64,000 nucleotides of DNA from Penicillus capitatus (lineage: Eukaryota; Plantae; Chlorophyta). Within the stretch, counting starts at the first letter, position 1; the number at the start of each line of letters is the position of its first letter. Position numbers and translations under genes: made by a program. The stretch covers positions 524,113-588,112 of the forward strand of contig OZ287703.1 in the NCBI GenBank assembly GCA_965649825.1, read 5' to 3'. The notes under the pieces are model-generated. The model searched no databases. It saw nothing but the letters and a program-made list of their open reading frames with translations, and was not told the origin of the DNA. This document shows, one piece after another, positions 1 to 55,100 of this stretch.

Positions 1-2
1 AA

Positions 3-3000
3 ATCGTTCAGCTATGCAGAAACCTCGGAGGACCACTTTCAGAATATTTTAAAGACATTTCAGAAAAAGAGGAGAAGATTGTGAAATACTTCTGTCAAAA
101 TCCAGACAGACTGATCTCACAGACAAAGGGATTCATATCGCACTCCACGTTCACAGACTGGAAATCGAGAAAAGCCTTTATCAAAGATATGTGCTCTGTT
201 CTGGACGCCGTGTTTTGCATTCTTGATGTGCAGTTCAGAAACCGCAATCAAGAATTCGAGCGCATCAGAGAGCTTTTTCAGAAGACCTCTCAGATCAAGC
301 ATCTTCTGTGCTGTTTCTTTCCTTTGGAGAAAGAGGCTTTTGGAAAGGGAGCCAGTGTCTTGGGGGATTGCTTGAGTCGCAGCAAAGATCGCGCTGTCAG
401 GTACAATCTTCAGAAGAGGCTGTCGGAAGTCATCTGCGAGGCGGACACCAAGCTCTCTTGTTCCATCGTCAGGTTGATGAGGAGTGCAGATGCATCGACA
501 GCTGAGAGGAACAGAACTGGTATTGCTTTTGCGTTGAGCGCACTGGACTGGAAGACCACTCTGCTTCTCCCTGAAAGCTTGCTGGTCTCTGCACATGAAG
601 GTTTCTGTGGCTTAGAGATCCTGGATATCCAGAGGAAGTTCAGCAGAATGAGAATCTTGGAGGAAGTGTGCCAGTTACTTGCCGGGTTGTCACTTCAGAG
701 TAATGAAGGCTCGTCTAGCATAATTAAAAGTGCCGCGGAGACAGGCTATCGAGTAGTCCAACAGTTGACGCTGGGTGTGAGGCAAAAAACAGTGAACCTG
801 GGACAGAAAGCAATGAGTTTCTTTAGAAGAACGAACTCAAATTCTTCGGGTCCATCGACGTCAGATGCACATGAAACCGAAGAACACGATGGAAATGTCG
901 AGTTGGTGCACGCCGCCGCGGAACGATTGGATCCCATACTGCAATCATCAGATAGCAGCATGGTATTGTTCGATGAATTAAACACTGCAGTTGAATTCCA
1001 CAATGACATCATGTCTTACCTGCTTGAAGATAGGAGGAGAAACAAGAATGCTGCATTGACAAGAAGCATTAAAAAATGCGGCGAGCTTCTTGATCGTCTC
1101 CGTTGCTCTTCCCAGAGCATTGCTAAGAGTGAATTCTGCCTACCCTGGATTGCTCTTTTCGAGTCTTCAGTCAAAATCGACGTCCCATACAAGGTTGTGA
1201 GACGCTCTCAAGAAAACTTGCAGAGGGAGATCTTTGAGGAAGAAGGTTCCACGAGTGCTGCACTTCTGGTTGGCGAACTCGACCTAGGCACTTGCCTGTC
1301 TGAGCTGGTCTCCCTTGTACTCTTCGAGAAAGAAGCATCTGGTGCTGACTATGAGAAGACACGTGTGAGTGTGCTCCACTACACATGGAGTGAAGAAAGC
1401 TCATCTAACAGAAAGTGGATCGAACAATGGATGCAGAAACATGAAAACACCTACACCTTCTCTTTCTCTGACAAGAAACTGTTACCTGTCGACTCTCTTC
1501 CCAGACACCGTCTTTCGAGACTAGGCATTACGATTATTGCGTGTCTCTCCACTTTGGCGATTCATGGAAAAGACGGTGGAGCAGCGGGAAAGAGAGCCAG
1601 TGATGTGAAGCAACGATTCATCTCCGGTCTGGAGAAGCAGATGACTTCTTACTTGAGCGAAGTAGAGCTTTGGTCGAATAAGGAAGATGATAACTTGTTC
1701 CATCACCTGGTTCAACTGGATGCAAGCCTTCTTCGCAGTCAGAGGCAAGGACTAACTGCCACCAGGAGAGAATTGAGTGGATTTCTTCGGGCATTCTCCG
1801 ATACGAAGCTATCGATCGAAAAGTCGAAGATAGAAGAGACGCTTGATGCCATAAAGGAAAAACTGCTGTCGTCTGGATGGCAATCGACATCAATTGCCTA
1901 CAGCTTCAGGAACTTGATGGTAAAACTGGCGGATTACCCTGTGCAAGAAATAACCTTATGCCTGAAAGGGCTTCTTCGACAAGCAGAATCCAGATTTGGC
2001 GATTACTTCCTTGCCATGGACATGATTGCCCCAGTTTTGAAGCTCAAGGAACTCATGACAGAGTACGCAGCAGAATGTCTTGATGCTAACGATTCGAGCG
2101 TCTGGAAGAAGTGCAACGATCTGTGTTACTTTGTTTCAGAGGTCGTTAAGTACTTCATCGACTTTTTGATTGTGAAAGATGACAAAATGGAGCTCAACAG
2201 AGCAAAACCTCTTGAGGATTTCGATCAGTGGCATGAAGCTCTAGATAAGCTCATAGCTGAACTGGAGATTCCTGCGAGTCTATTGCAAGAGAACGACCTT
2301 GAAAACATCTTCTTAAAACTGAAGAATAAATACAAAAAGCAATTGAAGGAAGAAAACAGAGAAGCAAACTTTGCAAGGACAGGCCTTCTCGGTATTCAAG
2401 CTAAAGAAGGCTCTACTGACGGATCCATTGTGCCTGAATCTAAGGCCGAGATTCAGGCGAGCAAAGTGGCAGGCCTAAAAAGCGGATTCCAAAATCTCTG
2501 GAAGAAAGCGAAGAACCAATCTCAGCCGGCAACGTTTGTCATGCAAGAGGCAATAAAGGCTGTTCAGGTACTGGATCGTTTGAGAGGAGATGAACTGAAC
2601 GACATCACTCTCGCGAGATATCAAAATAGATTACAAAATCTCCGAATAGAGTTAGACAAGTCGCAACTGGAAGAGATTAGCAACAGAAAAACAACAATAT
2701 CAAACGAGCTCGAGGATCTTCTGTCGAAGAGGCCGAATTGCATGAACACTGCCGATTTCTCATTTGCGCACCAGGACCCCGAAAGATGCAGCTCATCTGA
2801 GGATCAGCAATTTCAGACACAACTGCGCCAGTTGGAGGAAGCCGTTTCCACAAAGTCAAGCACAAAGGAAGAAATCGAGTACTTGATGCATGTGGCATCC
2901 AACTATCAGAAGCATTCACTGTTGCAGCAAGCACTCGAGGTTCTCTGCCAATGCTGCAAGCCGCAAAACACAGAAGAGGGCAGCCGAGAGTTAAGAGAAC

Positions 3001-6000
3001 TGTCGGGTTTGCACATCTTCTCTGATCAACTCACCAATTGCTTGGCGTTTGAAGCAGACCGAGTTTCATACAATGAGCTGATGAACTGTGCAGTTGCTGA
3101 ACTATCCCAAATGCGAGCACAGTATCTGGTCGAAGAGTATTATGATCTGTTGGTTGGGTGGAAGTCCGGAAAAGTGGGGAGATCTCTGAAAGCCGTTGTG
3201 GATCTGTGTTCTGCTGAACGCTTCTCAATGCTGCATGCCAATACAACATTGGAGGAAATAGATGGTTGCATTAAACAGCTGCAGAAATGTTTGGCGTCGT
3301 TGACAGCCTTGAGTGAGAGTGGCCTCTGTTTCGCAAGCCCGAGTCTCTCCGTGGAAGACGTTGCTGTTCTTTTTTCAGCCAGTCCTGATTTCTTGCGCAG
3401 TTTCCTGCTGAATCCAGTAAGAACCAGCGAGGAAGACTCTGTCCCTGTGGAATTTGATTCCTCAGCAAACCAGCAGGGAGGGCTCCTGTCAATGCTGGCC
3501 TATCAACAGGAAGATGGCTCTTTGCTTCCAGTTTTCAATAGATCGTCTGGTGCAGACAGATTCCTGAAAGCTATGAAGAATGTCGTTGTCGATGAATGGG
3601 GAGAGAATGTCAGTCAAGATGAAGATGATCTTGCTGTGCAAGAAATCTTTGTTGCCTTTCACTTTGTCCTGATGTCTTTCGTATTTTCGAGACAAGAATC
3701 CAGTCATTTGGAATCGACTATCAAATTGGCGCCTTCTGAACCATCACAGAAGAAAATGAATGACCTAGAAGCACTCATCGGTCGTTGTCAAGAGAGTATT
3801 GATAATGACCGAACTCGACTTTCACAGAAAGGACTTGAACAAGAGAGGGGCACATCACGGCTTCGACGAGTGGAGGAAAGTAACGTAAAGAGGCATATTG
3901 ACAAAATCCAAGACGAAATGGAGAGAAAGCAAGAGGAACTGGCACAAGCAAGGGAAGAAGCAGACTCGCGTCGATCTGAAATTTGTCACTTCCTGACGAG
4001 GTCGCTACAAGATTTACTGGCGAAGGCTTTGCAGTGTTTCTGCAAAATTGTGAGATCGAACACACTAGAATTACTTTTGAGGGACGGTAAAGCGGTGTCA
4101 ATGAAAACTCCGTATTCATTGTGCAAGTCCGTCGTCCACGAAATCTGGAATTCCACATGCAAGAGAAGAGATGCAAGTTATGAAGCCAAGGAAGAATTCG
4201 AGCAATGGCAGCAGTCGTACACTGAGTTCTGTGAAGAACACTTGGCACGGTTGTCTAGCGAAGATCCACTAAGAAAGGCTGCCGAGATTCTGTGCAAGTG
4301 TGCATTCATTGGAAACCAGCGTACACTTCAGCTCATGTCTTCCGCGTCCAAATCTCTCACCATACTTGATACTTCGTTGATAAGCGCCGGGGAAAAGGCA
4401 AAGATCCTTGTGGAGAGGCTTACGGACATGTGCATCAATGACTTCGGCAATGAAACTGTGATAGAAGAATTGTCTGAAGACCTGCTGAGTTTGGAACACA
4501 AATGCAGAAGCCTTGGAGAGGAATGTGAGGCAAATGATGCCATTTGCCTTGATCTGGCTTACCTTAGAAACTTGATTCTGCACTCTGTCGGTTGCTGCTG
4601 TTCTTATGCCCACAGAATGCATCCAATGAACTGGTATGAAGATACACTTCTGCCAAGGTTGGCGGAATCTGTGAAGGAGACGGTCCTTCTTTCGATGCCA
4701 TCTTCTGATGAAGAAGAGTTAAAGGCAGAGATGAAATTGCTTCCATGCTGTTGGGCAAGCCACACGATGTCGCTGCAAACCAGTATCGTCGAAGACACTC
4801 TTGTGAATCCCTTCCGACTCATATACATCCTTGAACAGTTTTTTGCTGAGAGTGCTCCACTTTATCAGTCAGTTTCCTATGTTGGAAAGCACTTCATTGA
4901 CGGGGTTCTGGAACTAAAAAACAAACTGGGCGACGTTTCTCCGACAAACAATGTTCCCATCCTTACCTCAGTCGAGTGTCAGAATCTCGATCTCCTTGTA
5001 ACGCAGCTGCTGGAGATGTGCGAGGAATCGCTTCCTGCAATGACAGCAGAGCAGACACACCAGAGATTCGCCAAGCTTTCGAAGAAGACCCTAAAATTGA
5101 CCAAAGTGATGATCCAAACAAGGAAAGACCCAAGAGCTTACATGGCAGGTTACTTGGGAAGAGTTTGTGAGCAGTGGTGGTACGAGGCCACATCCATGTG
5201 TCTACAGAAGCTCCCGGCAGAACATGAATATGCCGTCGAAACGCTCAGTCAAAGAATCTCCGACACTGGATCCGATGTGACTGCTCTGCAAGGTCTCTTG
5301 CAGTTGTCCGATTTCAGAGATCTCGGCAAACTAAGGGAAATCCTTCGCAATGAAGGAATGGATCTTGCATCTGCCAAACTCAGTGACCAGCAGATGAGCT
5401 ACCTTCAAGTCTTTTCTTCTGTCTTGAGTGAACTTCCTTTCTGTGCAAGACCAAGACTGTTGCATAACTGGCAAATGTGTCAAACATTTCCAAGTGCCAG
5501 AATTCCTATCCAACAGTATGATAAGCTCTTGATGGCACACAGAGGTCTACTCAGGACACATGTGCCGAAGATCCTCCGCTTAAAAAGTGCAGTTGATAAA
5601 GAAACTGAAATGGTCATCAAAAAGGCTTGCAGTGTGCCGCATCACTTGTGCAGTGGAATTGGTCAGGATGTTGCAAAACTTTTGCAAAGATTGCAGTCTG
5701 ATATCCAAGAGGTGGTTGAGAATGCAGATACCCTTAACGAAGAATCTGCTTCAGCACGCAGAGACTACAATAAGAGCGTTGCTTCATTCCTTGAAGAGCG
5801 CCATAAGAAAAGAGAACGAACTCAGCAAAACTTGTGGCAACGGGTTCGTTCTCTGACACAACGCCGACAAGATCTTTTCCCAGAACTAGCAGAAACTGCG
5901 AGAGATCTTTGTTCGCATTATTCTGACCTCTGGAGGGTGGCTAGTCGTTGTTTCAAACATGAAGGAATTTCTGACTGGCATATGCAGGAGAGCAATGGAA

Positions 6001-9000
6001 TTTTAGACTTAAGCAGATCGCTAAATGATGTACTGCAGAAGCAGCAAGTCCTTTATCAAGGAAAACACGTCGCCGATTGTATCAAACTTGCAAGATATAA
6101 ACTGAAAAGAGTTGTTACCCAGTTGGACATTTTGTCTCTGGATCTGGATTCTTTTCTCCGGTTCGAAGACGCAATGCTCCAGATCGAAGTATCCGAAGGA
6201 GGCACAGGGGAAGTAGTTTCTGTGCGTTGTGAAGATGAGTTAAAAAAGCTGCTGCCCATCTCCTACGCTGTCGCAGATATAGCGCGCTTTAAGCTTAGAC
6301 TGGGATTCACAGGAAAAGACAGAAAGGAGTTCGTTAGAAAGTTCAAGTTGAGAGACATGGACAAACCCGTAACTTTTCAAGTCGGCCGGTTCAAATCTGG
6401 GAATAAGAAAACCATTGTGAGCTTCCATGCCATTAAGAGAACGACGATCGTTGGAAGCGATGCTTCTCTGCTGTCAGAAGCATCCTGCTCAGAATCCTGT
6501 TCAGACCCTTTGAATGACTTGTCAGCAAGAATGCACAGTCTCCTTGCAGATTACGAAAATCATTATGAGGAACTGCAGAAGAACATTCGACAGAAAAATG
6601 ATGCCGAGAAGGAAGAGAAGGAAGTATCTGCCCATTTAGAAACAAAGAAATCCGAACGGATTTCCATCGAGACAAGTTCGCATACGCGCATCATCGAGCA
6701 GTGGAATGGTATCCTTGGAGAGATTGTAGTTTCAGTACATAAGGCACAATCCGACCTGATGACCGCAAGAAGACCTCAGACTGTCAATTTGATCAACAAA
6801 GAAAATGAAGACGGCTTGAAGAGAATTAACGACGCAATGCAAAAAATGCAGGAATTGAATTTTGATGAGAGAAAATTGTCTGTTGTGGAATTCGACTATG
6901 CTGGCGAAAAACTGTCCTTCGTGTGGACTTCGGATATGCGATTGGCTTTCATGCAGATGAAGAAATGTGCGGACGACATGCGGCGGCTAGGGGAAAGGAG
7001 TCTTGAACTGTTATTTGCTGCAGCTCTTCTTGAGTTGTTCCAGTCCAGTCTTACGATAGTCTCGAAGAAAGACTTAATCAACCTTGAAAGGGCACTGCGA
7101 GAGTGGAGAGACATACTGGGAGACAGTCCCATGTCACTCAATCAACAAGAAGCCATTGCCTTCAAAGCTGAAAACCGTTGCCGCTCTGCATTGTCGCTTG
7201 CCGATGCCAGAGTCCAATGCATGATGTGCTTCGAGTATATCAGAGAAGAACATGAAAGAATTATTCTTTTAAACAGGAGAGACAATCTTTTGCTTCCAGG
7301 GACCAAACTGCACCACAGCGCCAAGCTCATTGTCACGCAGTCGGACACAGGGATCTGCATACTTGACCCCAGACATAACAGTATTGATTTTGGAACACAT
7401 CTGTACGCTGCAGATGACAAGAAGGCTGGATCGAGGGCACACGTGTGTATTGTGGAAGTGGTGAACCGTACCGCTTCGACGATGATTGTCTCAGTGGATC
7501 CCGTGAAAGGGTCATCTAATGGGTTCGCTGTTCTTGCCCCGAGTAGGGTCCGTCTCTATGGGAGATCGACTCATCAGTTTTCGTTCCGCATCAGTGACAA
7601 GGCAGTTGGAAGAATCTGTGAGCGTTGGAGAATCGAATCGCCTGAAACAAAACTGAATGATTTCTTCGAGCTTTGCGCAAACATCCAGAGACTGGCTGTT
7701 CAGCTCAGTGCAGAGGAGATGGATTTTGGAGTCCTGCTGGCGAGCTCACAACGACAGAAGCGCAAGATCTTCATCAGGAATGTGACAGACCTGCCCTTGT
7801 TGATCAAGAGCCAGATCCAATCCGACAATACCCGTTGCACACTCTCCATGTCGCCAGAGAAGATGTTGTTGCTGCCAAGAGAAAAACAATCTCTGGAATT
7901 CACACTGAAACCCAGTGCCACTGAAGAGAAGGTCGAATCCACTGTCGTCATCGGAGCTGTGCAGAGCTTTAAGTACTTGAAGCTGAAAGCGAAAATCAGT
8001 CGACCAAGATATGCGTTCTTGAATGAAATGCGCAAAGAATTCGATGCTTTGTATGAGATGAAAGCTGTGAAAAAGGGCAAGAAAGCCACAGGTTGCCTCA
8101 GTGTGAAGAACGAAGGGGATGTTCCAGTCGTTTTTAACATCGACTCAAAATCATATGCATTGAAGATTAAACCCTCTGCTGGAAGTGTACCTGTTGGCAG
8201 TGAAATTCCAGTAAACTTGAGGATGAGATGTCCTGACAACTCAGATGTCCTCAGGATTCAGGCAACCGTGTCTGTAAAGGGATGCCAACAAAGACAGCTG
8301 ACGATCAGTGGAAGGTGGATAGATCCCATTCCCACTTTCACCAAGAAGAATGTTGAATTCAAGACTCTGACAGAGCAGCTTGTGCATATGGTAAAGAAGG
8401 ATGAGAGATCGCTGGAGCTCACTGCTCGAAACAAGCTCATCAACAAGGATGACATTCCCGTTACTGTCTATCCACCAAAAAGTGATGACTTCACCTTTAA
8501 TCAGCCCCACTACAGCTTTGAACGAAAGGGAGAGATCGATGTTGAAATGAAGTGGACAGTGAGACGGCTCAAGAAGCAAAAGCACACTGTGACCTTCCTC
8601 ACAGACACAAAAAAGAAACTGTCTTTCAAAGTGCATCTTTCATTGACAGTCGGGAAGCTCGAGATCACTCCAACGAGATGGGTGCGACTAAATTCAGTAA
8701 AACCCGGAGAAACCATGCGAAGAGATATAAGGATCAATACTGATCATCATCAGTTTTCCATTCTCAACAAAGCCCCCCAATCCGAGCTGATCGAGACCCT
8801 TTCACTGGCGGAACTTCATAATGGATGCCCGAAGAAAGATCAGAAGCCCTGGCTGCTTGGATCAGATGACATGTCCACAGTCTTTCGCTCGTCGAAGCAG
8901 TTTGAAATCTGTGTGAAAGCAAAAGAAGGGACAGGCTGGATAGTGGAAGACTTGGCCTTCCAGACAGAACAGGCCGTTTTCGTTCACGAAGACCCGGAGA

Positions 9001-12000
9001 GATGTCAGTTGATGCAGCAGAAGTTAACGATCATGGCTCCTGTGTCGGCCACATCAAATGCATTAGCCAATCTGATGCAATCACTCAAGAAATCTGGTGG
9101 GTACGTGCTAGTAGGCAAGTATACAGCCTTCTGCCTTCCAAATCTAGAGATTCTGAGCGAAATGAGCTCTTCTCCGTCCACAGCACAGTCCTTTCTTCTG
9201 ATGATACTGTGCGAAGTCGAAATCCTCCAGAAGGAGTGGAAGTTGACAACAGAACTAGCACGTCGTATTCTCGGCAGCGATCCCGACGATGCAGTCTCGC
9301 TCTGCGCTCGTCACTTGAAGCACTTGGAACAATCACCAAGAGGGAAGGCTGGCCCATCCTCTGATCTTGCAGACTACTTTGGGAATCTCAAAGATCACTT
9401 CGAGAAGAGAGGTCACGACGACATGTCCGACATATGCATTCCTGTGGCTGCTGTCTCGAATGTTCCGGTCAATATCCAAGCTGTGGCTCAGGCGATGTAC
9501 ATGCTGTTGCATGCAGACTGCACAGAGGAGCAACAGTGGAAAGCCGCTGTCGCTGTGATGAAGACAACCATTCCTGATGCCTTTAGTGCCACTCAGTTTG
9601 ACAACACGTGCGAGGCCATTGCGGAGTTGCTTGATAATCAAGAATCGACGCTTTGCGACATATTGACTCTGTTGAAGAGTTTGATGCTCTCTGATGATGA
9701 GGAAATCGCTTCTTTTGGATTCACCACAAGCATTATCGAGAGTATCCTAAAAACCGATGCTGGCTCAAGTGTTGACACAGTCATTGCAGATTTGCTTCCA
9801 GAAGATCGCCAGCACAGAGAATTCATAATGCAATCCTTATTGCTGAACAAAGATAACAGAAAGGACACGTTGCTGTCTCTTGTCGGCAACCGTATGAGGG
9901 ACTCAGTGAAGCAATTGTGCTTTGGTGATCCCGAGGCTATCGTCACAGGATTCTGTCGTCTTGTGAAGGAAGACGAGAACCAGATCAATTGCAACATGAT
10001 GCGAGATCTAGTCAGAGGGTTGTCTGAAACGGGTAACCAAGAAAAGAGACCACTGACTAGACATCATGGCGATTCTCCCAGCGAAAAAGCAAAGAAGAAG
10101 ATTGAGCCAATACTTCAGGGTGCTCAACTGGAATCTGTGTGCGATCCAATCTGTGCTCTTCATAGATGCGAGAGTGGAACAGAAAGGAATCACAACGTCC
10201 GGAGGGTTGTCGTGGAAACGCTCTTTGGTGTCTTCCCTCGTCTTCCTGCTGGTCGCCACGAACTTCTGAGGAAGATCAAGTCGGCTGCCTTGAGGATATC
10301 TGATGGATTCTATCCGCCAAGCTCTCGGAAGAAGGCGGCGGACGTAATAGAAAAAGAACTTGAGTTTGTGGAAGTGAAGCATCGCTCGAAGCTGAGAGAC
10401 TTGATGATGCAGTGGATCCAGCTGAAGCCACGCGACGTTGGCATTGATCTTATGCTGAAACCGTTGATAGAGACGCTGCGAGAACTAATACCAGTGGATG
10501 AGGGCACGAGCTCTGAGCCATCTCGTGTTGATCTTCAGAGCATCGAAGAATCGCTGATCGAGGCATTGACCAGACTGGATCCTGTGGCCATTTCTCACAC
10601 AACACATCCTCACGATCTGCTTTCGAAAGTCGTCAGCTTTATTGCCGTGTTGAATAAGAATTTCCCAGAGAAGGTAGTCGAGCTCGCAGATAAGCTCTCT
10701 TCTCTGCAGATGGGTCCAACAAAGGAAACAGCAATACGCGCTTGCGGACCAATCTCTGAAGAACTATCGACAGACGCATTTAAAACAGTACTGGATCTTT
10801 TGGAAGAAGATCTTGATGATGAAAATCTTGAGAAAACGATCCTACATCTCATTCTGCCGCAGCAAATTACTGAGGCTTTTGACACTCTCGTCGAATCTTG
10901 GTCTGATGTTGATTCAGACGTGAATGGAGAAGAATTGCTAAAGAAGATCGAAGAAATCAGCGAACCGGCTGTGATGTCCGCCTTTATGCTTGTTGGCGAC
11001 GTGCTGAAAGCAAAGAACTCGGTCACACACATGGACGAATCACAGATGGAGTCCATCGAAGGCCTTCTTAAAATCAAGAAGCTCTTCGATTCGCTTTCCG
11101 CTCTGGGTTGTTGGGAGAAGAGAGAGAAGAGTCAAGCAGCTTGGAACATTCTCCTGTCTGCAAGTGCCATTGGACACAAAGCCGAACTGACATTTGAAGG
11201 CCACTGTCTGGTCAAGATGTCATTGCTGCTGTCCCTGGCCCAGTTCTACGGAAAAGAACATTGGAAGGAACGAGAATCACCATCCTGTGAAGATGACAGA
11301 TGTCTGAAGCTTGAAATCGCTGATGTGCCAGAGGAGTCGCCTTCCGAAGACAGTGGTGATGAAGAAGCAGAATGTGAGGAAATCGCATCAAGAGACGAGG
11401 AGAAGATACCTGCAGACGAAAACGAAGCAACTGCCGTTTCAGAAGATGGCGAGTGGCACTGGCTGTTGGAAAATTTCGAAGTACCGGAGGATCAGCTTGC
11501 ATCCCTAAGAAACGAAAACTCAGGAGAGACGGAGATGTCAGCTACCGAAAGTGGATCGACTGTTCAAGAAGATGACGTCAGTGTTGAGAGCAGCATTGGA
11601 TACATGGAGAAGCTCGCCAAAGTCGAAGGCATTCTCGAAGCAGTGATGAAGAGCGTAGATAATACATCAGCGTCACCCAGTGAAGACTCGTCACTCAGAG
11701 CTCTCACATTCGATCACATCGTGGATAGCATCGCAAAAGTGCAAGCAGCTGCAGACTCTTGGAATGAGGTATTCGAAGAGGCAGTTCGTCATTCCCATAT
11801 TCCAAAGAAAAAAGAAGACAAGAATGCTGATAGCCGAGTCGTATGCGCAGGGCTGTCCCTCATCTCTCAAATTCAGTTCTTCAAACGATACTTGGAGCGC
11901 TGCACTCTCTTTGAGATTCCGGGATTTGTGAAGGATGCGCTTGACGGCATTGTGCAACATCTGAATGCCATCCCCAAGAGCAACTCGCTAGCAGAGTTTG

Positions 12001-15000
12001 ACAAGATCCTCAAAGAGTTTGGCGCGATGAGTGTCGCGAAAGGACGCACAACAGAAGACTTCCCATTGCCATCACGGCAAGGGATTCCTTTTCAAACTGA
12101 AAAGAGTAGTCCCTGCGGAGACGAAAACCAACGAGCACGCGGCCATTCCTCTTCTTGTGCTGAAACAACAAGTAATGCGGAGGATGCCATGGTAGTCGAT
12201 ACCACACACAGAGGCTTTCTCCAGGAACTGAAAAACATAGTTTCGAGTTGCAGTTTTCAGTCTATGTCGGCAGTGAGACTGCAAAGTGTGGAAGGCCAAA
12301 AGATTGTTCTGCAGGCGGGTAAGGAATTGCAGTCTGGGAGATTTCAAGAAAGGGAAACAAAAGTGCAATCGTCCGTGATGGAAGACAGGAAGATTAAAGA
12401 ATGCAGCAAGATCAAGCTTCCTTCTGTGATTAAGGGAAGCACACATCGATGTGAGCAAGCTAGACAATTCAGTCAGAATAAGGGCAGTGCAGCTAAAAAA
12501 GATCAGGGATTTGATTTCTTCGCAGATACTGCAGAGGATGGGAGAATGGAAACATTTCAAGCATATTTCGATATTGATGAAAAAGCAATGCCTCATAGTG
12601 TCAGAGATGCTGATCTGGCAGAAATCTACAAAGACACTACTATTACAAGGGCTGATGTTGAGAGGATAGAACCAAACGATCCAGTCTCGGTTGACAGTCC
12701 CCATCCCCCACCTGACAGATGGACTTACCGTTTGCTTATTAAAAGCAAACCATTTGTGCGTTTTCTGGTGGAAGTCCTTCACATGTGGGAAGCTCACTTT
12801 GAGAGATTCTATAGATCGACAGCCGAGAAACACAAAATTGAGTGGTGCATTCTTGTTGACAATTCAGGATCGATGATCACCAAAGATATCGAGATGACAG
12901 AGGCTCTTGTTCTTGTGATGGAGACACTGAGGCGACTAGAGCAGCCGTTTGCCGTTGCTCGGTTTGGAGACCGGAAGTCTCAACAGATGCTGAAGATGAT
13001 GAACGAACCCTTCACGCAGCTTATTGGGCAGAAGATTCTTGAATCTTTCTCTTTCGACGAAGGCACTTATCCTGCTTCAGCTGTGAGGCATGTGGCTGAG
13101 AAGGTTTGGCCAAACTGCTTGTCCGAGAGCGACAGACTGCAGTGTCACCGAGTGATGCTTTTGATCATGGATGGACTGACACAAGAAAGATCTCCAGAAG
13201 ACTACACATCCATCTGCGACGAGAGAGAATTCGAACTTGTTGTCTTGAACTTGAAAGACGAAGCGCAGAAGGAGATTATGAGCCAGATTGAAGGGTTGTG
13301 GAGTAATGCTGCCTCTTTTTATGAAGTGCTGGACGTGCAATCAGTTGACCTTTTGCCGCAGTTGTTGGCTGGACTCATGATTCAGTACATGAAAAACACA
13401 CTCTCAAATATAGAGAAGAACAGATATCAGCTACGCGGTATTGAACAGCCAGGTGTCCAGGCTTGTTGTTTCGAAGACGTGAAGCTCAGCGTGGATGAAT
13501 CTGTGCTGTCATCAGATCTCAAGAAGCAATGTCTTCCTAGACTGCCTGGAGACTTCAGCAAGAAGAGCTTCTTCGACTGTGGATGCGAGACTGATGGAAT
13601 CCCGTATGCAATTGAGATGCGAAATCTGTTGAGCACAGACCTGGACCTTGATGGTGTTGCACTGGATCATGTTGAGAGAGAGCTTCTCGAGTTGCATCAA
13701 AGTCTACAGGTCCTACCAGAAAACAAGGATCATTTAAAGGAAGCTGAGATTGCTTGGATGAAAGCCGAAGAGTGGTTGAGTGTGGAGATTGCACATATGG
13801 CGGAAGCACTCGAAGGATTTCTCCCACAGAATCGCTTCACGAGGAAGAGGGCCGACATTCAGGGTCCATCCATCCATCTTCCAGGATTCATCAAGCACAT
13901 TGCGACTCAAGGCAACGAGAAGAAGATCTTCGCGAACAAGAAGGGAGGAGGGAAATCTGAGTACTCTGTGGCTGTCCTCCTGGACATCTCTGCGTCGATG
14001 GCGCAGGGTAGAAAGCGTCCATGTGCACTGCAAACAGTTGTGATGCTGATCAGTGCTTTGAAGCAGATGAACATCGAAGACTTCTCAGTCATTCTGTTCG
14101 GTGGCGGCATCTATCCGATCAAACTGCCAGACGATGTCTGGGAAGCATCTTCTATGGCCTTGCTCTTCTCTGCAGTCTTGCATAGAAACGAGCTCTCTAC
14201 CATGGATGCAGACGCTCTGCTCTTCGCTGCGCAGCTGCTCGATCAGAGCAGTGTCAGAGGACCAAAGAAGATGTTTGTCGTGACAGATGGATACGGGAGT
14301 TCGGGAGTTAGGTTGGCAGGCGTGCTCCACAAGATTGAAGAAGATCTGGGAGTCGACGTGTTGGCGATGGGCGTCGGTCCAGAGGAGTTCTTTGTCAAGA
14401 AATGCTATCCCAAGTGGATTACTGCCGCGTTGCCTCAGATGGTGCCGGATGCATTGGAAAGCATGTGCGACAGAATGGAGGGCGCAGCCAAACTGCAGCA
14501 GACGACCCAAGAGGACAACGCCGAGTCGCAGACGCTTGCTTATATAAAAGAAGGAGCGGCCGAAACTGTAGAAGAAGTTCTGAGAAACAGGGAGATCTTG
14601 TTTCCTGATTTACTGAAGGATATGAAGACAGAACGAGAAGCCAGGCTTCGGCGAGGGAACAATGCTTCTACTTTCGAAGTGGACATCTGTTTTGTCATTG
14701 ACTGCACGGGATCCATGAAGAGTTGGATAGATGCCGTGAAGCAGCAGATAGAGGTAAGAATGAAGAACTAATGTTCGATCTGAGATGTATGTTCACTATA
14801 GTTCGTCGCTGAGCACATATCGCATAAGATTGAAGAGAAGCATCCCAAAATAGAACTGAAGCTCCGCTTTGCAACACTCGCGTATAAGGATTTTGGAGAT
14901 GACGACAGTTTGATTCTTTATCCATTCACCGACAGCGTACAAGAGTTACAATACGCTCTTCAAGAATTAACGGCGGAAGGCGGTTCCGACTTACCAGAGG

Positions 15001-16101
15001 ATGTGCTGGGAGCTTTGAAGTATGCAGCTGACCTTGACGATTGGCAGAGCAACATTCGATTCTGTGTACTGATTGGCGATGCACCTGGACACGGAAGAGA
15101 TCTCAACGACCTCGATGACGACAGGTTTCTAAACAATTTGTCTTTGTACACAATGTGAGACATTTGTGATCAGGTACCCAGATGGAGATCCAACTGGACT
15201 GACGGCAAGCAGTGTCATGGCGGATCTGAAAGCAAAGGAGATCCACTTACTCTTCTGCAGGATAACGCACAAAACAGACAAGATGGTCAACGAATTTGCG
15301 AGACACTACAATGACGGCGTGAAGTTTGAGTTGACATTGAAGGATGTGTTTGGAGACTGCACAGTATGCACCTCGGTATACTTGAGACTGAATGTCTTAA
15401 TTGTGTGCATTTCTGCCTGTGTAGGCTGATGTTCAGACAGGCTTTCACACCGTGTTGTGTCTGGACGAATCTGGGTCAATGGAAGGACAACCTTGGCAAG
15501 ATGTCTGCAACGCTTTTCAGCAATTCTTAGCGAAGAGAGTGCTCAATCAGGCGACATCTGATCTTGTCAGCGTCATTCAATTCGATCACACGGCCAACAT
15601 TGTGATGGAAGGAGTACCACTTCAATCAAATCTGGGACTTCTGGATTACCATGGCGGAGGAACACATTTCATTCCCCCGCTTATTACTGCATTAGAAATT
15701 CACCTGCGCAATCAGACTGCTCATACGCCCGTTCTCATTTTTATGTCAGATGGAGAGGCTGCGGATCCGCACGATGAAATCATATATGTAATGAGACAGC
15801 TCGTTCAATACTGCCCATCACTAGATGTACACACAGTAGGATTTGGACATGGTGCATCACACTCTCGATTACAAGTACGTAACATTTTTACATGGTGTCA
15901 GATTGTTGACCATTCGACTGTTGTCAGGAAATGGCAGCCGAGGTTGGGGGACAGTATCACCAGGCTATCACAGGAATCGATTTGTCAAACGTCTTTTCGG
16001 ACATTTCGGATAACTTGAATACAACAGATGCACTTACTTCTCAGTTTGGAAAAGTGATCGGCGACATGGTTTCCTCTGCCATCATTCTTGGACATCTCTG
16101 A
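3..16101 (+). CDS. Giant multi-VWA protein, paralogue A (5'-partial, >=5,295 aa): helical/coiled-coil region, C2-like domain, ASH/PapD-like Ig array, acidic spacer, four VWA/MIDAS domains
   Basis: The frame is open from nt 3 (IVQLCRNLGG...) with no stop to 14753. Exons are 3-14753, 14802-15124, 15174-15363, 15425-15874 and 15928-16101, joined by GT-AG introns of 48, 49, 61 and 53 nt. MIDAS motifs are EWCILVDNSGS, VAVLLDISAS, DICFVIDCTGS and VLCLDESGS, each with a downstream acidic partner motif (MDG, TDG, GDAP, SDG). It is colinear with the gene at 52194-63999. Confidence 0.88.
13911..14223 (+). repeat. Left arm of a ~94% identical inverted repeat (VWA2 core); partner at 54081-54393
   Basis: Manual codon-by-codon comparison with the reverse complement of 54081-54393 gave 20 mismatches in 313 nt and 4 amino-acid changes. 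Confidence 0.9.
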
Positions 16102-52193: not shown

Positions 52194-55100
52194 TCAAAGA
52201 TGTCCTGTAATGATAGCCGAAGCTACCATATCTCCAATCACTTTTCCGAATTTTGAGGCCAAAGCATCCGTTGCTGACGAACTGGCTGCAATGTTAACGA
52301 AAGCGGTCGATAGATCCACTCCCGTCATCGCTCTGTGATACTTTCCACCAACGATGGAAGCCATATCCTGAAAAGCACGAACGCCTCGGCCATTGAACAG
52401 TGAAGCTGCTGATAGTGCCGTTACCTTTAGAAGGTCATGTCGTGCAAGAGGTCCAAATCCGATTGTGTGGACGTTCATTGGGCCATAGCTGTTATAGATT
52501 TGTTCCATTCTACCAGGTATCCGTCTTTTACCGTCACCAGATGCTCCATCCGACATAAAGATGAAGACAGGAATCTCGTGCCTCTGTCGATAGGACAGGA
52601 CTTCTTCGGCAGCGTCCAGTGCAGGATGAAACTTTGTACCCCACTTCGGAATTGAAGACAGTCGCACATTCCCAGTCAACGGTTCTCTGATGCATGTTGT
52701 GTAGGCGTGATCATCAAACTCAATAAGGGTGATGACGTCTCTCTTTGACTGATCTTCTATTCGCTTATCTAGGAATTGCTGCAAGGCTTCCTTCAGATCT
52801 CTCCATCGTCCACCTTTCATGGACTTTGATTTGTCCAGACAAAACACAAAGTGGTAATGAAGTTGCGCATTATCCTGTCAAACAACTTTGTGAGAAACTG
52901 AGAGCGCAGGTCACGACGAACATACCGATGCATCGCCGAAGACGTCTTTGGAAATCAAATCAAATCGCCCATCTCTGTTGTAGTGTCTGGCAAAGCAACC
53001 GATCATTCTGTCCGTGTCAGGTGTGATTCTGCAGAAGAGGAGATGAATATCCTGTTCCATTAAATCCGCCATGAGACTTTCTGCTGTGATATGAGGATGA
53101 CCTTGAGGGTACCTATTGCAGAACCAGCATCAGCATTGGAAGTTTAGTGAATAGCTAGTCAGCTGGTCGAACCTGTCATCACTGCACGTGTTGAGTTCAT
53201 GTCCATGGCCAGGGGCATCGCCAATAAGCACACAGAATCGCACTTGGCTTTGCCAATCTTCCATCAGTGCAACAGCGTTCAGCGCTCCGAGCACATTTTC
53301 AGGCGTATCTGATCCGCCATATGCCGTCAGAGACGAAAGGAAAAGAGAAAGCCGCAGAGGATCTGAAGAGAATGGATGGATCTTTAGACGATTAACGTCT
53401 CCATAATCTCTGTAGGCCACCATGGCGAAACGGAACTCCAGTTCCAGATTTGTATATTCTTCTTTGAGTTTCTCGGAAACCATCGTCGCAATGCCCTGCA
53501 AAAATTAGAAGTGTATCATGTTCAATGCCGTCAGTCACCTAATCTGCTCTTACCTTAATCTGCTGTTTGGCAGCGTTTAGCCAGAACGACATAGAACCGG
53601 TGCAGTCCAGGGCAAAACAGATATCCACTGTTATGGCAGATGGCCTGTTGCCTCTTGTAAGCCGAGCTTCTCTTTCTGACTCCATCAACTGCAGTAAATC
53701 TGGAAAGACACCCTCTCTGTTCACCAGAACTTCTTCGAACGTATTCGCCGCTCCTTCTGGAACCAGCCCGACACTGAGCCAGTCGATGGTATCTTTCTGG
53801 TAAGTTCTCTGCATCCTTGCTGCATTCTCCATTCTATCTGTCAATGTCTCTAAGGCGTTTGGCACCAGTTGAGGCAACGCAGCCGTAATCCACTTGGGAT
53901 AACATTTTTTGATGAAGAACTCTTCTGGGCCAACACCCAATGCTGTCACATCCATTCCTGATTCGTCAAGTTCTTTCAATACTGCTGCCAGGCGAATGCC
54001 AGAACTTCCATACCCGTCTGTCACCACAAATATCTTCTTTGGTCCACGGACGCAGCTCTGATCAAGCATTTTCCCTGCAAAGAGCAGAGCATCTGCATCC
54101 ATACTGGAGAGCTCGTTTCGTTGCAGGACTGCAGAGAAGAGCAAGGCCATCGAAGGTGCTTCCCAGACATCGTCTGGCAGTTTGATCGGATAGATCCCAC
54201 CACCGAACAGAATGACTGAGAAGTCCTCGATGTTCATCTGCTTCAGAGCACTGATCAGCATCACAACTGTTTGCAGTGCACATGAACGCTTCCTACCCTG
54301 CGCCATCGACGCAGAGATGTCCAGCAGGACAGCCACAGAGTACTCGGACTTCCCTCCTCCTTTCTTGTTCGCGAAGATTTTCTTCTCGTTGCCTTTAGTG
54401 GCAATGTGCTTGATGAATCCAGGCAGATGGATGGATGGACCCTTGATGTCGGCCCTCTTTCTTGTAAAGCGATTCTGTGGGAGAAAGCCATCCAGTGCTT
54501 CCACCATGTGATCAATCTCTGCACTGAATCTCTCTGAAGCGTTGAGCCATGTGTCTTCAGTCGCTCGTAGCTGATCCCTCTTCTCTGTCTGTGTTTGCAA
54601 ACCTTGGATCTCGCCGTACAGATCTTCGTCCAAAACACTGTCCAGAGTCACATTCACGTGTTCCAAGGCAGCCGTTTCTGTTCCGAAAGGAATTCCGTCG
54701 GATGAGAATCCACAGTCAAAGAAACTTTCCTTCGGATAGCTTCCTGGCAAAGGCGGAAATGGTTGTTTTTCTAATTCTTTCAGGAGTATTCCTTCATCAA
54801 CATGCAGATTGGATCCAGAGAGGTCTGTTGCTTTCGGAGGATCCTGTTGGATAGTCGACAGCTGATTCCTGTTCTTCTCAATCTTCGAAAGCGTGTTCTC
54901 CATGTACTGAATCATGAGTCCAGCCACCAGCTTCGGCAGCAGATTGATGGATTCTATGTCCAGCACTTCATAGCAAGATGCAGCTTCACGCCACAAGTCT
55001 TCAATCTGGCTCATCATCTCTTTCTGCGCTCTGTCTTTCAGATTCAGGACAACAAGATCGATGTCTTTATCGTTGCAGACAGAAGTGTAATCCCGCGGAG

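What the first reader, a model, noticed from the sequence alone, without database searches (positions are those of the whole stretch)
3..16101. Giant (>5,300 aa) protein family ending in four tandem MIDAS-intact VWA domains, present twice
Seen: two convergent paralogues (3-16101 + and 52194-63999 -). Both follow the order long helical/coiled-coil region, beta-rich C2-like segment, coiled coil, Ig-like array, ~900 aa helical region, D/E-rich spacer, then VWA1 (DNSGS), VWA2 (DISAS), VWA3 (DCTGS) and VWA4 (DESGS/DKSKS). All eight MIDAS motifs keep their metal-binding residues. Known: VWA/MIDAS domains bind partners through a metal ion and often work with MoxR/dynein-like AAA+ rings (midasin, VWA8, RavA-ViaA); DxTGS VWAs occur in alpha-kinase vwkA-type proteins. 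Inference: I know no described eukaryotic protein with this four-VWA tail. Large size, local duplication and fast divergence outside the VWA core resemble giant surveillance or immune-type proteins more than single-copy midasin.
Basis: partly seen in the sequence, partly recalled or inferred. Interest (0 to 1): 0.9.

Follow-up and report, generated by a model that had tools for sequence, protein, structure and literature searches.

The report
Giant midasin-like ATPases with four VWA domains
The window holds the back ends of two huge green-algal genes from an undescribed sister family of midasin: a ring of six ATPase modules on a very long arm ending in four metal-dependent "grabbing" domains instead of one. 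Nobody has said what these machines pull on.

Summary
Gene A (3-16101, +) is one 14.75-kb open exon plus four small exons, 5,295 aa inside the window. Gene B (63999-52194, -) is a convergent paralogue with the same four intron positions, 3,859 aa. Both end in four VWA domains. In 31 family members the MIDAS residues are almost fully conserved in all four.

A is cut by the window; its allele on the other haplotype has an 8,166-aa first exon. B is cut by the contig end. Every relative with upstream DNA carries six midasin-type AAA_5 modules.

This is not canonical midasin:
- The ring forms a separate clade (100/100).
- The 3.7-kaa arm shows no sequence or fold similarity to the Rea1 linker.
- The arm contains an array of HYDIN/CFAP65-type ASH Ig domains.

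The family is patchy but wide: green algae, Mesostigma, Chlorarachnion, Amoebophrya, a choanoflagellate and rotifers. I found no paper describing it.

The immune-type reading gets little support. dN/dS is 0.25, allelic diversity equals that of the flanks, and the gene order next to B is conserved between two related assemblies.

Best reading: a midasin-like ATP-driven protein-pulling machine with four ligand-binding heads and an unknown substrate.

The parts
3..14753 (+). Gene A, giant exon 1 (4,917 codons inside the window). It runs off the window start. It encodes the whole post-ring arm, VWA1, VWA2 and the start of VWA3.
   Evidence: Open frame. Colinear at 67% identity with P0001 residues 2315-7209. 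The allele on the other haplotype is called as an 8,166-aa ORF.
3..2342 (+). Arm base, A residues 1-780, directly after AAA6. Mostly helical, with a small alpha/beta subdomain at about residues 396-490.
   Evidence: AlphaFold2 pLDDT 80.2, pTM 0.67. Foldseek against PDB gave nothing at E<=0.001 and no Rea1 or dynein chain in the top 50. hhalign against 12 midasins gave probability below 2%.
6108..6452 (+).
   Evidence: Eight or nine strands at pLDDT about 80 in the model. No Pfam hit. C2 identity was not tested.
6501..7271 (+). Long helices / coiled coil (A 2167-2423).
   Evidence: DSSP of the model, helices 148-404.
7314..9032 (+). Array of at least five ASH/MSP-type Ig-like domains (A 2438-3010).
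   Evidence: Pfam HYDIN_VesB_CFA65-like_Ig 36.7 bits (cut-off 25.5), Cep192_D3 29.6 bits, Ig_CFAP65_4th 27 bits. Foldseek top hits are chains of ciliary central-apparatus structures, 7som_D at E 4e-23, then 9ijj and 7sqc.
9033..11282 (+). Helical region of about 750 aa (A 3011-3760).
   Evidence: No Pfam hit. hhalign against midasin gave probability below 1%. Conserved at 25-35% identity among paralogues.
11307..11492 (+). D/E-rich spacer (A 3769-3830, more than 30% D+E), followed by low-complexity sequence up to VWA1.
   Evidence: Composition scan.
12849..13343 (+). VWA1, MIDAS motif DNSGS ... T ... D.
   Evidence: Pfam VWA 21.2 bits. hhalign to the midasin MIDAS domain, probability 98.2%. 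Motif conservation in 31 tails.
13968..14381 (+). VWA2, MIDAS motif DISAS ... T/S ... D.
   Evidence: Pfam VWA 32 bits and VWA_2 28.6 bits. hhalign probability 98.8%. Motifs.
14685..15363 (+). VWA3 (DCTGS ... GGxDxPE ... DAPxHG), split by introns 14754-14801 and 15125-15173.
   Evidence: Pfam PF25106 VWA_4 41.8 bits. Splice model. Motifs.
15449..16101 (+). VWA4 (DESGS ... T ... D) and the C-terminus, with intron 15875-15927 and the stop at 16099-16101.
   Evidence: Pfam VWA_2 55.1 bits and VWA 51.7 bits. Splice model.
53554..63999 (-). Gene B, giant exon 1 (3,482 codons in the window). It starts at about the equivalent of A residue 1373. Its 5' end is lost at the contig end.
   Evidence: Open frame. 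It equals P0002, whose called start lies 129 nt from the contig end. 41% identical to A.
52194..53495 (-). Gene B exons 2-5 (53495-53173, 53112-52926, 52874-52425, 52367-52194), encoding the rest of VWA3 and VWA4 (DKSKS).
   Evidence: Splice model with the same four intron positions as A. Pfam VWA_4 45.5 bits and VWA_2 48.6 bits.

Best explanation
A and B are two paralogous members of an undescribed eukaryotic family of single-chain AAA+ mechanoenzymes related to midasin (Rea1/MDN1) but distinct from it.

Architecture. The full protein is about 8.5 kaa for A. It has:
- an N-terminal helical region of about 800 aa;
- six tandem MoxR/dynein-class AAA_5 modules that should close into one ring;
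- an arm of about 3.7 kaa, made of a helical base, a beta domain, a coiled coil, an ASH-type Ig array and a second helical region;
- a short D/E-rich spacer;
- four VWA domains, each with a complete or near-complete MIDAS metal site.

Inferred mechanism, by analogy with Rea1 and MoxR-VWA pairs. Each MIDAS site holds a divalent cation whose coordination is completed by an acidic residue of a bound protein. ATP-driven movements of the ring and arm then put tension on the bound protein, and it is pulled out of a complex or remodelled. Four heads would allow multivalent capture, or capture of several different ligands. The ASH array probably anchors or positions the machine on a large cellular structure. 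ASH arrays are otherwise typical of ciliary, centrosomal and Golgi-associated proteins.

What is shown and what is inferred. The gene structures, the domain content, the homology, the separate clade and the purifying selection are shown. The ring in A and B themselves is inferred, from the 8,166-aa allele ORF and from all relatives. The force-transduction mechanism and any substrate are also inferred.
For: Ring.
- P0001 is colinear with A from its residue 2315. Upstream of that point it has at least four AAA_5 stretches (232 bits) plus the AAA_lid_7 midasin lid (42 bits).
- The paralogue P0020 adds AAA1 at residues 817-957 and an N-terminal 800 aa with no Pfam domain.
- P-loops of full-length members are spaced as in midasin, and long HSPs are colinear with midasin AAA2-AAA6.
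- The ring of a third paralogue hits solved midasins at E 1e-80 and NorQ at 2e-4. No dynein chain reached E<=0.001.
- In every locus with upstream DNA (L002-L006), AAA_5 ORFs sit directly upstream on the same strand.
- The alternate haplotype, 99.18% identical over 21.5 kb, calls the first exon of A as 8,166 aa. That places about 3,244 aa upstream of the window, matching the 3,271 aa that P0020 has before the equivalent point.

One polypeptide. A Chlorarachnion transcriptome ORF (7,408 aa) and a continuous metagenomic ORF (6,830 aa) each carry AAA P-loops and all four VWA motifs.

Tail. There are four Pfam VWA hits. The MIDAS residues are almost fully conserved in 31 tails. dN/dS in the tail is 0.07-0.18.

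Distinct from midasin.
- The AAA5-AAA6 tree separates 21 family members from 25 midasins of animals, plants, fungi and Amoebozoa at 100/100.
- Bit scores fall from at least 480-1,400 within the family to 340-415 for midasins.

Mechanism background. Rea1 has a six-AAA ring, a linker of about 1,700 aa and a MIDAS domain that removes assembly factors (PMC11603028). The Mdn1 MIDAS domain forms catch bonds with its substrates (PMC8837202). [quoted passage not shown]
Against: - The N-terminus of A was never read directly. I could not fetch the contig upstream of the window.
- B is truncated in this assembly.
- The arm has no detectable similarity to the Rea1 linker, so force transmission may work differently.
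- The P-loops of AAA4, and in this sub-clade AAA6, are degenerate: GESAFKTE and GPTCSKKT in P0001.
- VWA3 lacks the canonical MIDAS threonine.
- There is no expression data for this organism and no substrate.
- At least three or four paralogues per genome is unlike single-copy midasin.
Confidence: 0.65

Rival explanations
1. Immune or surveillance reading. These would be fast-evolving, locally duplicated sensor or effector giants, analogous to prokaryotic MoxR-vWA conflict systems or eukaryotic NLR-like proteins. The VWA heads would capture invader proteins.
For: - Several paralogues occur in one genome or assembly: A, B, P0020 and P0008, on contigs of 30-42x coverage in sample ERZ25074695.
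- Paralogues are only 26-44% identical outside the tail.
- The distribution across eukaryotes is patchy.
- A Ty3-like retroelement interrupts the B orthologue in a related assembly.
- MoxR-vWA pairs are the core of known prokaryotic conflict systems (PMC7159879).
Against: - Selection is purifying along the whole of B: omega 0.25 overall, with a maximum of 0.48 in any 200-codon window.
- Haplotype diversity in the tail of A equals that of the flanks, with 19 synonymous and 7 non-synonymous differences.
- The gene order next to B (MYST, Vps23, p450, LRR) is conserved in a related assembly.
- No death-fold, TIR, NACHT/NB-ARC, nuclease or protease effector domain was found.
- The putative ligand-binding sites are the most conserved part, not the most variable.
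Confidence: 0.12
2. Cilium/centrosome-associated remodeller, a more specific version of the best explanation. The ASH array docks the machine on axonemal or centrosomal structures, and the VWA heads extract or install components there.
For: - The Ig array matches HYDIN/CFAP65/Cep192 ASH models.
- Its best structural matches are chains of ciliary central-apparatus structures, at E 1e-19 to 4e-23, and the CEP192 SPD-2 domain.
- The ASH segment is conserved in Mesostigma, rotifers and other distant members.
- As far as I know, every named taxon with the family has a ciliated or flagellated stage: green algae, Mesostigma, Chlorarachnion, Amoebophrya, Stephanoeca, rotifers. This is my own knowledge and was not tested here.
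Against: - ASH/MSP-fold domains also occur in Golgi, TRAPP and other non-ciliary proteins; TRAPPII appears among the fold hits.
- TM-scores are low (0.1-0.17), so the match is at the level of domain type only.
- The family was not seen in Chlamydomonas, vertebrates or other well-studied ciliated models, but no search was aimed at them.
- There is no localisation data.
Confidence: 0.2
3. These are simply the organism's canonical midasin genes, used in ribosome biogenesis, as the automatic UniRef name 'Midasin' on some relatives implies.
For: - UniRef names P0016, P0022 and P0026 'Midasin'.
- The ring is midasin-class.
- A D/E-rich spacer precedes the VWA domains.
Against: - The family forms a separate clade from midasins of four eukaryotic supergroups at 100/100.
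- There are four VWA domains, not one.
- The arm is more than twice as long, contains an ASH array and shows no similarity to the midasin linker.
- There are several paralogues per genome.
Confidence: 0.03

Closest known systems
Midasin / Rea1 / MDN1 (ribosome-biogenesis AAA+ mechanoenzyme)
   Same: A single chain with six tandem AAA_5 modules and the midasin AAA lid. It has a long arm, an acidic spacer and a C-terminal MIDAS-type VWA domain. It is the closest solved structure by sequence (E 1e-80). VWA1 and VWA2 align to the midasin MIDAS domain at 98-99% hhalign probability.
   Different: A separate clade at 100/100. Four VWA domains instead of one. An arm of about 3.7 kaa against about 1.7 kaa, with no sequence or fold similarity to the Rea1 linker. 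An ASH Ig array in the arm. An N-terminal region of about 800 aa. An insert between AAA4 and AAA5. Several paralogues per genome.
Bacterial and archaeal MoxR-VWA pairs (RavA-ViaA, NorQ-NorD, CbbQ-CbbO, MoxR-vWA ternary conflict systems)
   Same: The same AAA+ class: NorQ is the next PDB hit, and there are weak Pfam bpMoxR hits. The functional logic is also the same, with an ATPase ring working on a protein held by a MIDAS-containing VWA partner (PMC7159879, PMC3495828).
   Different: In those systems the ring is built from six separate subunits and the VWA protein is a separate small polypeptide. Here everything is fused in one chain of about 8 kaa, in a eukaryotic nuclear gene with spliceosomal introns.
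VWA8 (animal mitochondrial AAA_5 + VWA protein)
   Same: A eukaryotic fusion of dynein-related AAA_5 modules with a C-terminal VWA domain (PMC7900673, PMC8517341).
   Different: VWA8 is about 1.9 kaa and has one VWA domain and no ASH array (my own knowledge). It was not compared directly: the length filters of the searches excluded it and no VWA8 sequence was fetched.
HYDIN / CFAP65 / CFAP47 / CEP192-type ASH-domain proteins
   Same: A tandem array of ASH (MSP-fold) Ig-like domains, seen with Pfam and with Foldseek.
   Different: Those proteins have no AAA+ ring and no VWA domains. Only the array is shared.

Membership tests
Midasin/Rea1/MDN1 | Six tandem dynein-related AAA (AAA_5) modules in one polypeptide, with the midasin AAA lid. 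| tested here: met
   Met in the relatives P0001, P0020, P0016 and P0030. For A itself it is only inferred, from the 8,166-aa allele ORF. The ring lies outside the window.
Midasin/Rea1/MDN1 | Groups with canonical midasins in a phylogeny of the ring. | tested here: not met
   In the AAA5-AAA6 maximum-likelihood tree, 21 family members and 25 midasins are split by a branch with 100/100 support. Bit scores drop from at least 480 to about 400.
Midasin/Rea1/MDN1 | Rea1-type linker (stem, middle and top, about 1,700 aa) after AAA6. | tested here: not met
   hhalign of ten 500-aa family tiles covering A 1-4100 against 12 midasins gave probability of 1.5% or less. A confident model of A 1-780 (pLDDT 80) has no PDB match at E<=0.001 and no Rea1 chain in the top 50.
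Midasin/Rea1/MDN1 | An acidic D/E-rich region followed by a single C-terminal MIDAS domain. | tested here: not met
   A D/E patch is present at A 3769-3830, but it is followed by four VWA domains.
Midasin/Rea1/MDN1 | The MIDAS domain binds the UBL domains of Rsa4/Ytm1; essential role in 60S biogenesis. | not testable with these tools
   This needs binding and genetic experiments.
MoxR-class AAA+ with VWA partner (works-like) | A MoxR/dynein-midasin clade ATPase functionally coupled to a VWA domain with a metal site. | tested here: met
   AAA_5, AAA_3 and bpMoxR hits. NorQ hit. MIDAS residues conserved in all four VWA domains.
Dynein heavy chain | Dynein motor with a stalk and microtubule-binding domain and the dynein linker. 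| tested here: not met
   No dynein chain at E<=0.001 in the PDB sequence search with the ring. There are only partial AAA_6, AAA_7 and AAA_8 P-loop hits overlapping AAA_5. No dynein chain is in the fold hits for the arm base.
VWA8 | A protein of about 1.9 kaa with AAA_5 modules and one C-terminal VWA domain; mitochondrial. | not tested
The size (about 8 kaa) and the four VWA domains differ.
ASH-domain ciliary/centrosomal proteins (HYDIN, CFAP65, CEP192) | Tandem ASH/MSP-fold Ig domains. | tested here: met
   PF22544 36.7 bits (cut-off 25.5) and PF22067 29.6 bits (cut-off 27). Foldseek E 4e-23 to central-apparatus chains. This shows a shared domain type, not family membership.
STAND/NLR-type immune receptors | A NACHT/NB-ARC NTPase with a repeat sensor and a death-fold, TIR or other effector domain. 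| tested here: not met
   There are only sub-threshold P-loop overlaps with NACHT and nSTAND3 inside AAA_5 modules. No LRR, WD or TPR sensor and no effector domain in the A or B tiles.
   VWA3 matches PF25106 VWA_4 (42-45 bits) and has DxTGS in 29 of 31 tails. No alpha-kinase domain was found. Whether PF25106 covers vwkA was not checked.

The most novel reading that the evidence does not exclude
This family is a third ancient lineage of eukaryotic single-chain six-AAA+ machines, beside dynein and midasin. It would have been present early in eukaryote evolution and lost many times. Its own type of arm carries an ASH array that docks it on ciliary, centrosomal or endomembrane structures, and four MIDAS 'hands' let it pull on several ligands at once. 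That would be a remodelling motor with no studied counterpart.
Probability: 0.3. Interest if true: 0.8.

Novelty: new variant of a known kind. Interest (0 to 1): 0.62.

Why it matters
Dynein and midasin are the textbook proteins that build a whole AAA+ ring from one chain. Work on them has shaped how we think force is passed from a ring through a linker to a cargo.

This is a separate family, spread across at least five major eukaryotic groups. It has the same kind of ring, an unrelated arm twice as long, and four conserved metal-dependent binding heads. It would be a natural comparison case for that mechanism, and it points to an unstudied cellular process.

These proteins are among the largest encoded in these genomes, at 7-8.5 kaa. 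In public databases they are labelled 'hypothetical' or, misleadingly, 'Midasin'. Members occur in organisms that may be open to experiments, such as rotifers and thraustochytrids (tractability is my own knowledge). The thraustochytrid Hondaea is represented only by a ring-region relative, with no tail seen.

Tried and rejected
- PDB sequence search with the VWA1-VWA2 tail found nothing at E<=0.01.
- Pfam on the first 6 kb and on 9-12 kb of A found nothing.
- I could not retrieve gene A's own full-length protein or the DNA upstream of the window. It was not returned. P0001 and P0020 exceed the 5,000-aa limit of the contig look-up. The allele on L007 runs off the fetched locus.
- A global MAFFT alignment of 18 full-length proteins timed out. 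I replaced it with tile-wise alignments.
- I first took P0020 for the allele of A, because a 99%-identical COG6 lies on a contig of the same length. It is only 69% identical to A, so it is another paralogue. The true allele is the 8,166-aa ORF.
- A, P0001 and P0020 are about equidistant in the arm, at 67-71%. Which of the two is A's orthologue remains open.
- Weak Foldseek hits of the arm-base alpha/beta subdomain went to CE-clan (Ulp1/SENP/YopJ-like) peptidases: 6ups, 2bkr, 8oi3 and 5klp, at E of about 1. I followed this up, but no His/Asp/Cys set is conserved in 10 paralogues. An active peptidase is rejected; the fold assignment stays open.
- The 'C2-like' label of the beta domain could not be tested.
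- No tRNA or Rfam RNA was found in the window.
- The literature searches found no description of the family.


Full report
**1. What is in the window**

Frame 3 of the plus strand is open from base 3 to a stop at 14769-14771, which is 4,922 codons. The minus strand is open from 63999 to 53542, which is 3,486 codons. Downstream of each giant exon the reading frame continues through four very short GT..AG introns. I placed them by maximising similarity to homologues, and to A in the case of B.
- A has introns 14754-14801, 15125-15173, 15364-15424 and 15875-15927, with the stop at 16099-16101.
- B has introns 53553-53496, 53172-53113, 52925-52875 and 52424-52368, with the stop at 52196-52194.

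The four intron positions are the same in both genes. This gives 5,295 aa of A and 3,859 aa of B inside the window, with no internal stop. The genes between them are ordinary nuclear housekeeping genes: COG6, a kinesin, a rhodanese, an LRR protein, a P450, Vps23/TSG101 and a MYST acetyltransferase. The window's COG6 is closest to Bryopsis (40%) and other chlorophytes (38-40%), then land plants. The host is therefore a green alga with no close named relative.

**2. The tail**

Pfam recognises four VWA units in both genes. VWA1 is below threshold, but it aligns to the MIDAS domain of 12 true midasins with 98% hhalign probability, and VWA2 aligns with 99%. In an alignment of 31 tails from the family:
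- The D-x-S/T-x-S motif is invariant at its three ligand positions in all four domains.
- The beta4 aspartate is also invariant in all four.
- The loop residue is T or S in all 31 tails in VWA1 and VWA2 and T in 30 of 31 in VWA4.
- VWA3 has an invariant GG-x-D-x-P-E and D-A-P-x-H-G signature instead.

The four-domain tail is a conserved unit of the family, not a local oddity.

**3.

A is cut by the window edge. B is cut by the end of its 494,854-bp contig. Searching the tail in a length range suited to the whole protein returned relatives of 3.3-7.7 kaa whose precomputed domains include AAA_5, the midasin AAA lid and dynein P-loop models.
- P0001 (7,225 aa) is colinear with A from its residue 2315 at 67% identity. 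The 2,300 aa before that point carry AAA_5 at 232 bits in at least four stretches, plus AAA_lid_7.
- P0020, another paralogue, adds AAA1 at 817-957 after 800 aa with no Pfam domain. There is no kinase or E3 domain.
- Full-length members have P-loops spaced like those of midasin, and long HSPs are colinear with midasin AAA2-AAA6.
- In all five loci where I could fetch upstream DNA, AAA_5 ORFs lie directly upstream on the same strand.
- A second contig of the same sample (38x against 30x coverage) matches window 10191-31748 at 99.18% identity, so it is the other haplotype. There the first exon of A is called as one 8,166-aa ORF.

That last point puts about 3,244 aa upstream of the window. P0020 has almost exactly the same length (3,271 aa) before the equivalent point. 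Full-length A is therefore about 8.5 kaa. Ring and four VWA domains also occur together in one transcriptome-derived ORF of Chlorarachnion (7,408 aa) and in one continuous metagenomic ORF (6,830 aa). This argues against the idea that the VWA3-VWA4 exons form a separate gene.

**4. It is not midasin**

By sequence the ring is closest to solved Rea1/Mdn1 structures (E 1e-80), then to NorQ. No dynein chain reached E<=0.001. Four results separate the family from midasin:
- (i) A maximum-likelihood tree of AAA5-AAA6 separates 21 family members from 25 midasins of animals, plants, fungi and Amoebozoa, with 100/100 support. Bit scores show the same gap.
- (ii) Profile-profile comparison of ten 500-aa tiles of the arm with a midasin alignment gives probabilities of 1.5% or less. 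Only the VWA tiles match.
- (iii) An AlphaFold2 model of the first 780 aa after the ring is confident (pLDDT 80, pTM 0.67). It has no PDB neighbour at E<=0.001, and no Rea1 or dynein chain is among the 50 best.
- (iv) The arm contains a beta domain, a coiled coil and at least five Ig-like domains. Pfam calls these HYDIN/CFAP65/Cep192-type ASH domains. Their best structural matches are chains of ciliary central-apparatus structures, at E down to 4e-23.

This ASH segment is also found in Mesostigma, rotifers and other distant members.

**5. Spread and copy number**

A HMMER scan of 1.84 billion representative proteins with VWA1-VWA2 found 125 clusters at E<=1e-30 and 252 at E<=1e-10. Many are fragments, and the longest is 7,751 aa. 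Named sources for proteins carrying the VWA tail are:
- Chlorophyta: Bryopsis, Apatococcus, Hariotina, Cymbomonas
- a streptophyte alga: Mesostigma
- Rhizaria: Chlorarachnion
- Syndiniales: Amoebophrya
- a choanoflagellate: Stephanoeca
- rotifers: Adineta, Rotaria, Brachionus

The thraustochytrid Hondaea contributes a ring-region relative (P0026). No similarity to A's arm or tail was found in it.

Their only names are 'hypothetical protein', 'VWFA domain-containing protein', 'MoxR-like ATPase/YegL' or an automatic 'Midasin'. Five literature searches found no description of the family. In this sample, contigs of 30-42x coverage carry at least A, B, P0020 and P0008. A 344x organism in the same sample carries its own member.

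**6. Selection**

- B against its orthologue in a related assembly (76% aa identity, dS about 0.53) has dN/dS 0.25 overall. The tail has 0.07-0.18, and no 200-codon window exceeds 0.48.
- The two haplotypes differ by 0.59% in the last 4.5 kb of A's giant exon. That is no more than the flanking DNA (0.5-1.2%). There are 19 synonymous and 7 non-synonymous codon changes.
- The gene order next to B (MYST, Vps23, P450, LRR) is conserved in the related assembly.
- A and B are 26-44% identical in the arm, 69-79% in VWA1-VWA2, 55% in VWA3 and 46% in VWA4.

This is the pattern of an old, constrained paralogue pair with a relaxed arm. It is not the pattern of diversifying immune genes.

**7. Mechanism (inferred)**

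In Rea1 the six-AAA ring and its linker convert ATP turnover into a pull on an assembly factor. The MIDAS domain holds that factor through a metal ion (PMC11603028). The MIDAS-ligand bond strengthens under load (PMC8837202). Across the MoxR/midasin clade, VWA domains act as metal-dependent substrate-binding partners (PMC3495828, PMC7159879). The family here keeps both ends of that design, ring and MIDAS sites, under strong constraint. It has replaced the middle and multiplied the heads. I therefore expect an ATP-driven extractor or remodeller that engages up to four acidic ligand sites. The ASH array would serve as a docking or spacing element. A link to cilia, centrosome or Golgi is suggested only by the domain type and by the taxa involved. 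I rate it at about 0.2.

**8. Verdict**

Novelty: a new variant of a known kind. Interest 0.62.

Noticed in passing
window 10191-31748 vs L007 (ena:ERZ25074695:ctg340476_38x_l): A second contig of the same sample is 99.18% identical over 21.5 kb. It is evidently the alternate haplotype, or a very close strain. It extends further than the window's contig and should hold full-length A and B.
   Followed up: partly
L002 1996-8144 (ena:ERZ26696514:ctg303791): In a related assembly a Ty3-like retroelement (gag-aspartic protease, RVT_1, RNase H, integrase) lies between the AAA part (1,448-aa ORF) and the remaining 4,398-aa ORF of the B orthologue. Another assembly has an uninterrupted 5,708-aa version (P0135).
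   Followed up: partly
window 12693-14669 (A residues 4231-4889) vs window 55632-53827 (B): Synonymous differences between A and B are saturated everywhere (pS 0.71-0.79) except in the VWA1-VWA2 block (pS 0.50-0.54). That block also has 82-85% nucleotide identity. This suggests an old gene conversion between the two convergent copies, or a later common origin of the block.
   Followed up: partly
window 14754-16101 and 52194-53553: All four introns of each gene are 48-61 nt long and clustered in the last 1.3 kb. The preceding 14.7 kb (24.5 kb in the allele) has no intron.
   Followed up: yes
window 1188-1562 (A residues about 396-520): The small alpha/beta subdomain in the arm base gives repeated but non-significant Foldseek hits to CE-clan (Ulp1/SENP/YopJ-like) peptidases and deubiquitylases. 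No catalytic His/Asp/Cys is conserved among paralogues.
   Followed up: partly
P0004 (4,809 aa, contig of 164,228 bp): A 'short' family member joins the ring and the first roughly 790 aa of the arm directly to the VWA tail. It lacks the equivalent of A residues 792-4192. It could be a natural deletion variant or a mis-assembly.
   Followed up: no
window 56668-56754 (gene B, spacer region): A 39-nt tandem duplication (2.2 copies, 89% match) encodes a repeated 13-aa unit (MDGW-KCRD-L-K) in B's low-complexity spacer.
   Followed up: no
Tree: The bdelloid rotifer sequences group next to the Bryopsis/window-type algal clade (90/80) rather than outside all green algae. This could mean horizontal transfer into rotifers or just poor resolution.
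   Followed up: no
L003 (ena:ERZ25074695:ctg340592_344x_l): The same sample holds a much more abundant eukaryote (344x coverage, a 6.9-Mb contig, also in NCBI) with its own family member. That member is split into ORFs of 887+, 1,621, 1,338 and 4,388 aa. The sample is therefore a mixture of at least two algae or eukaryotes.
   Followed up: no
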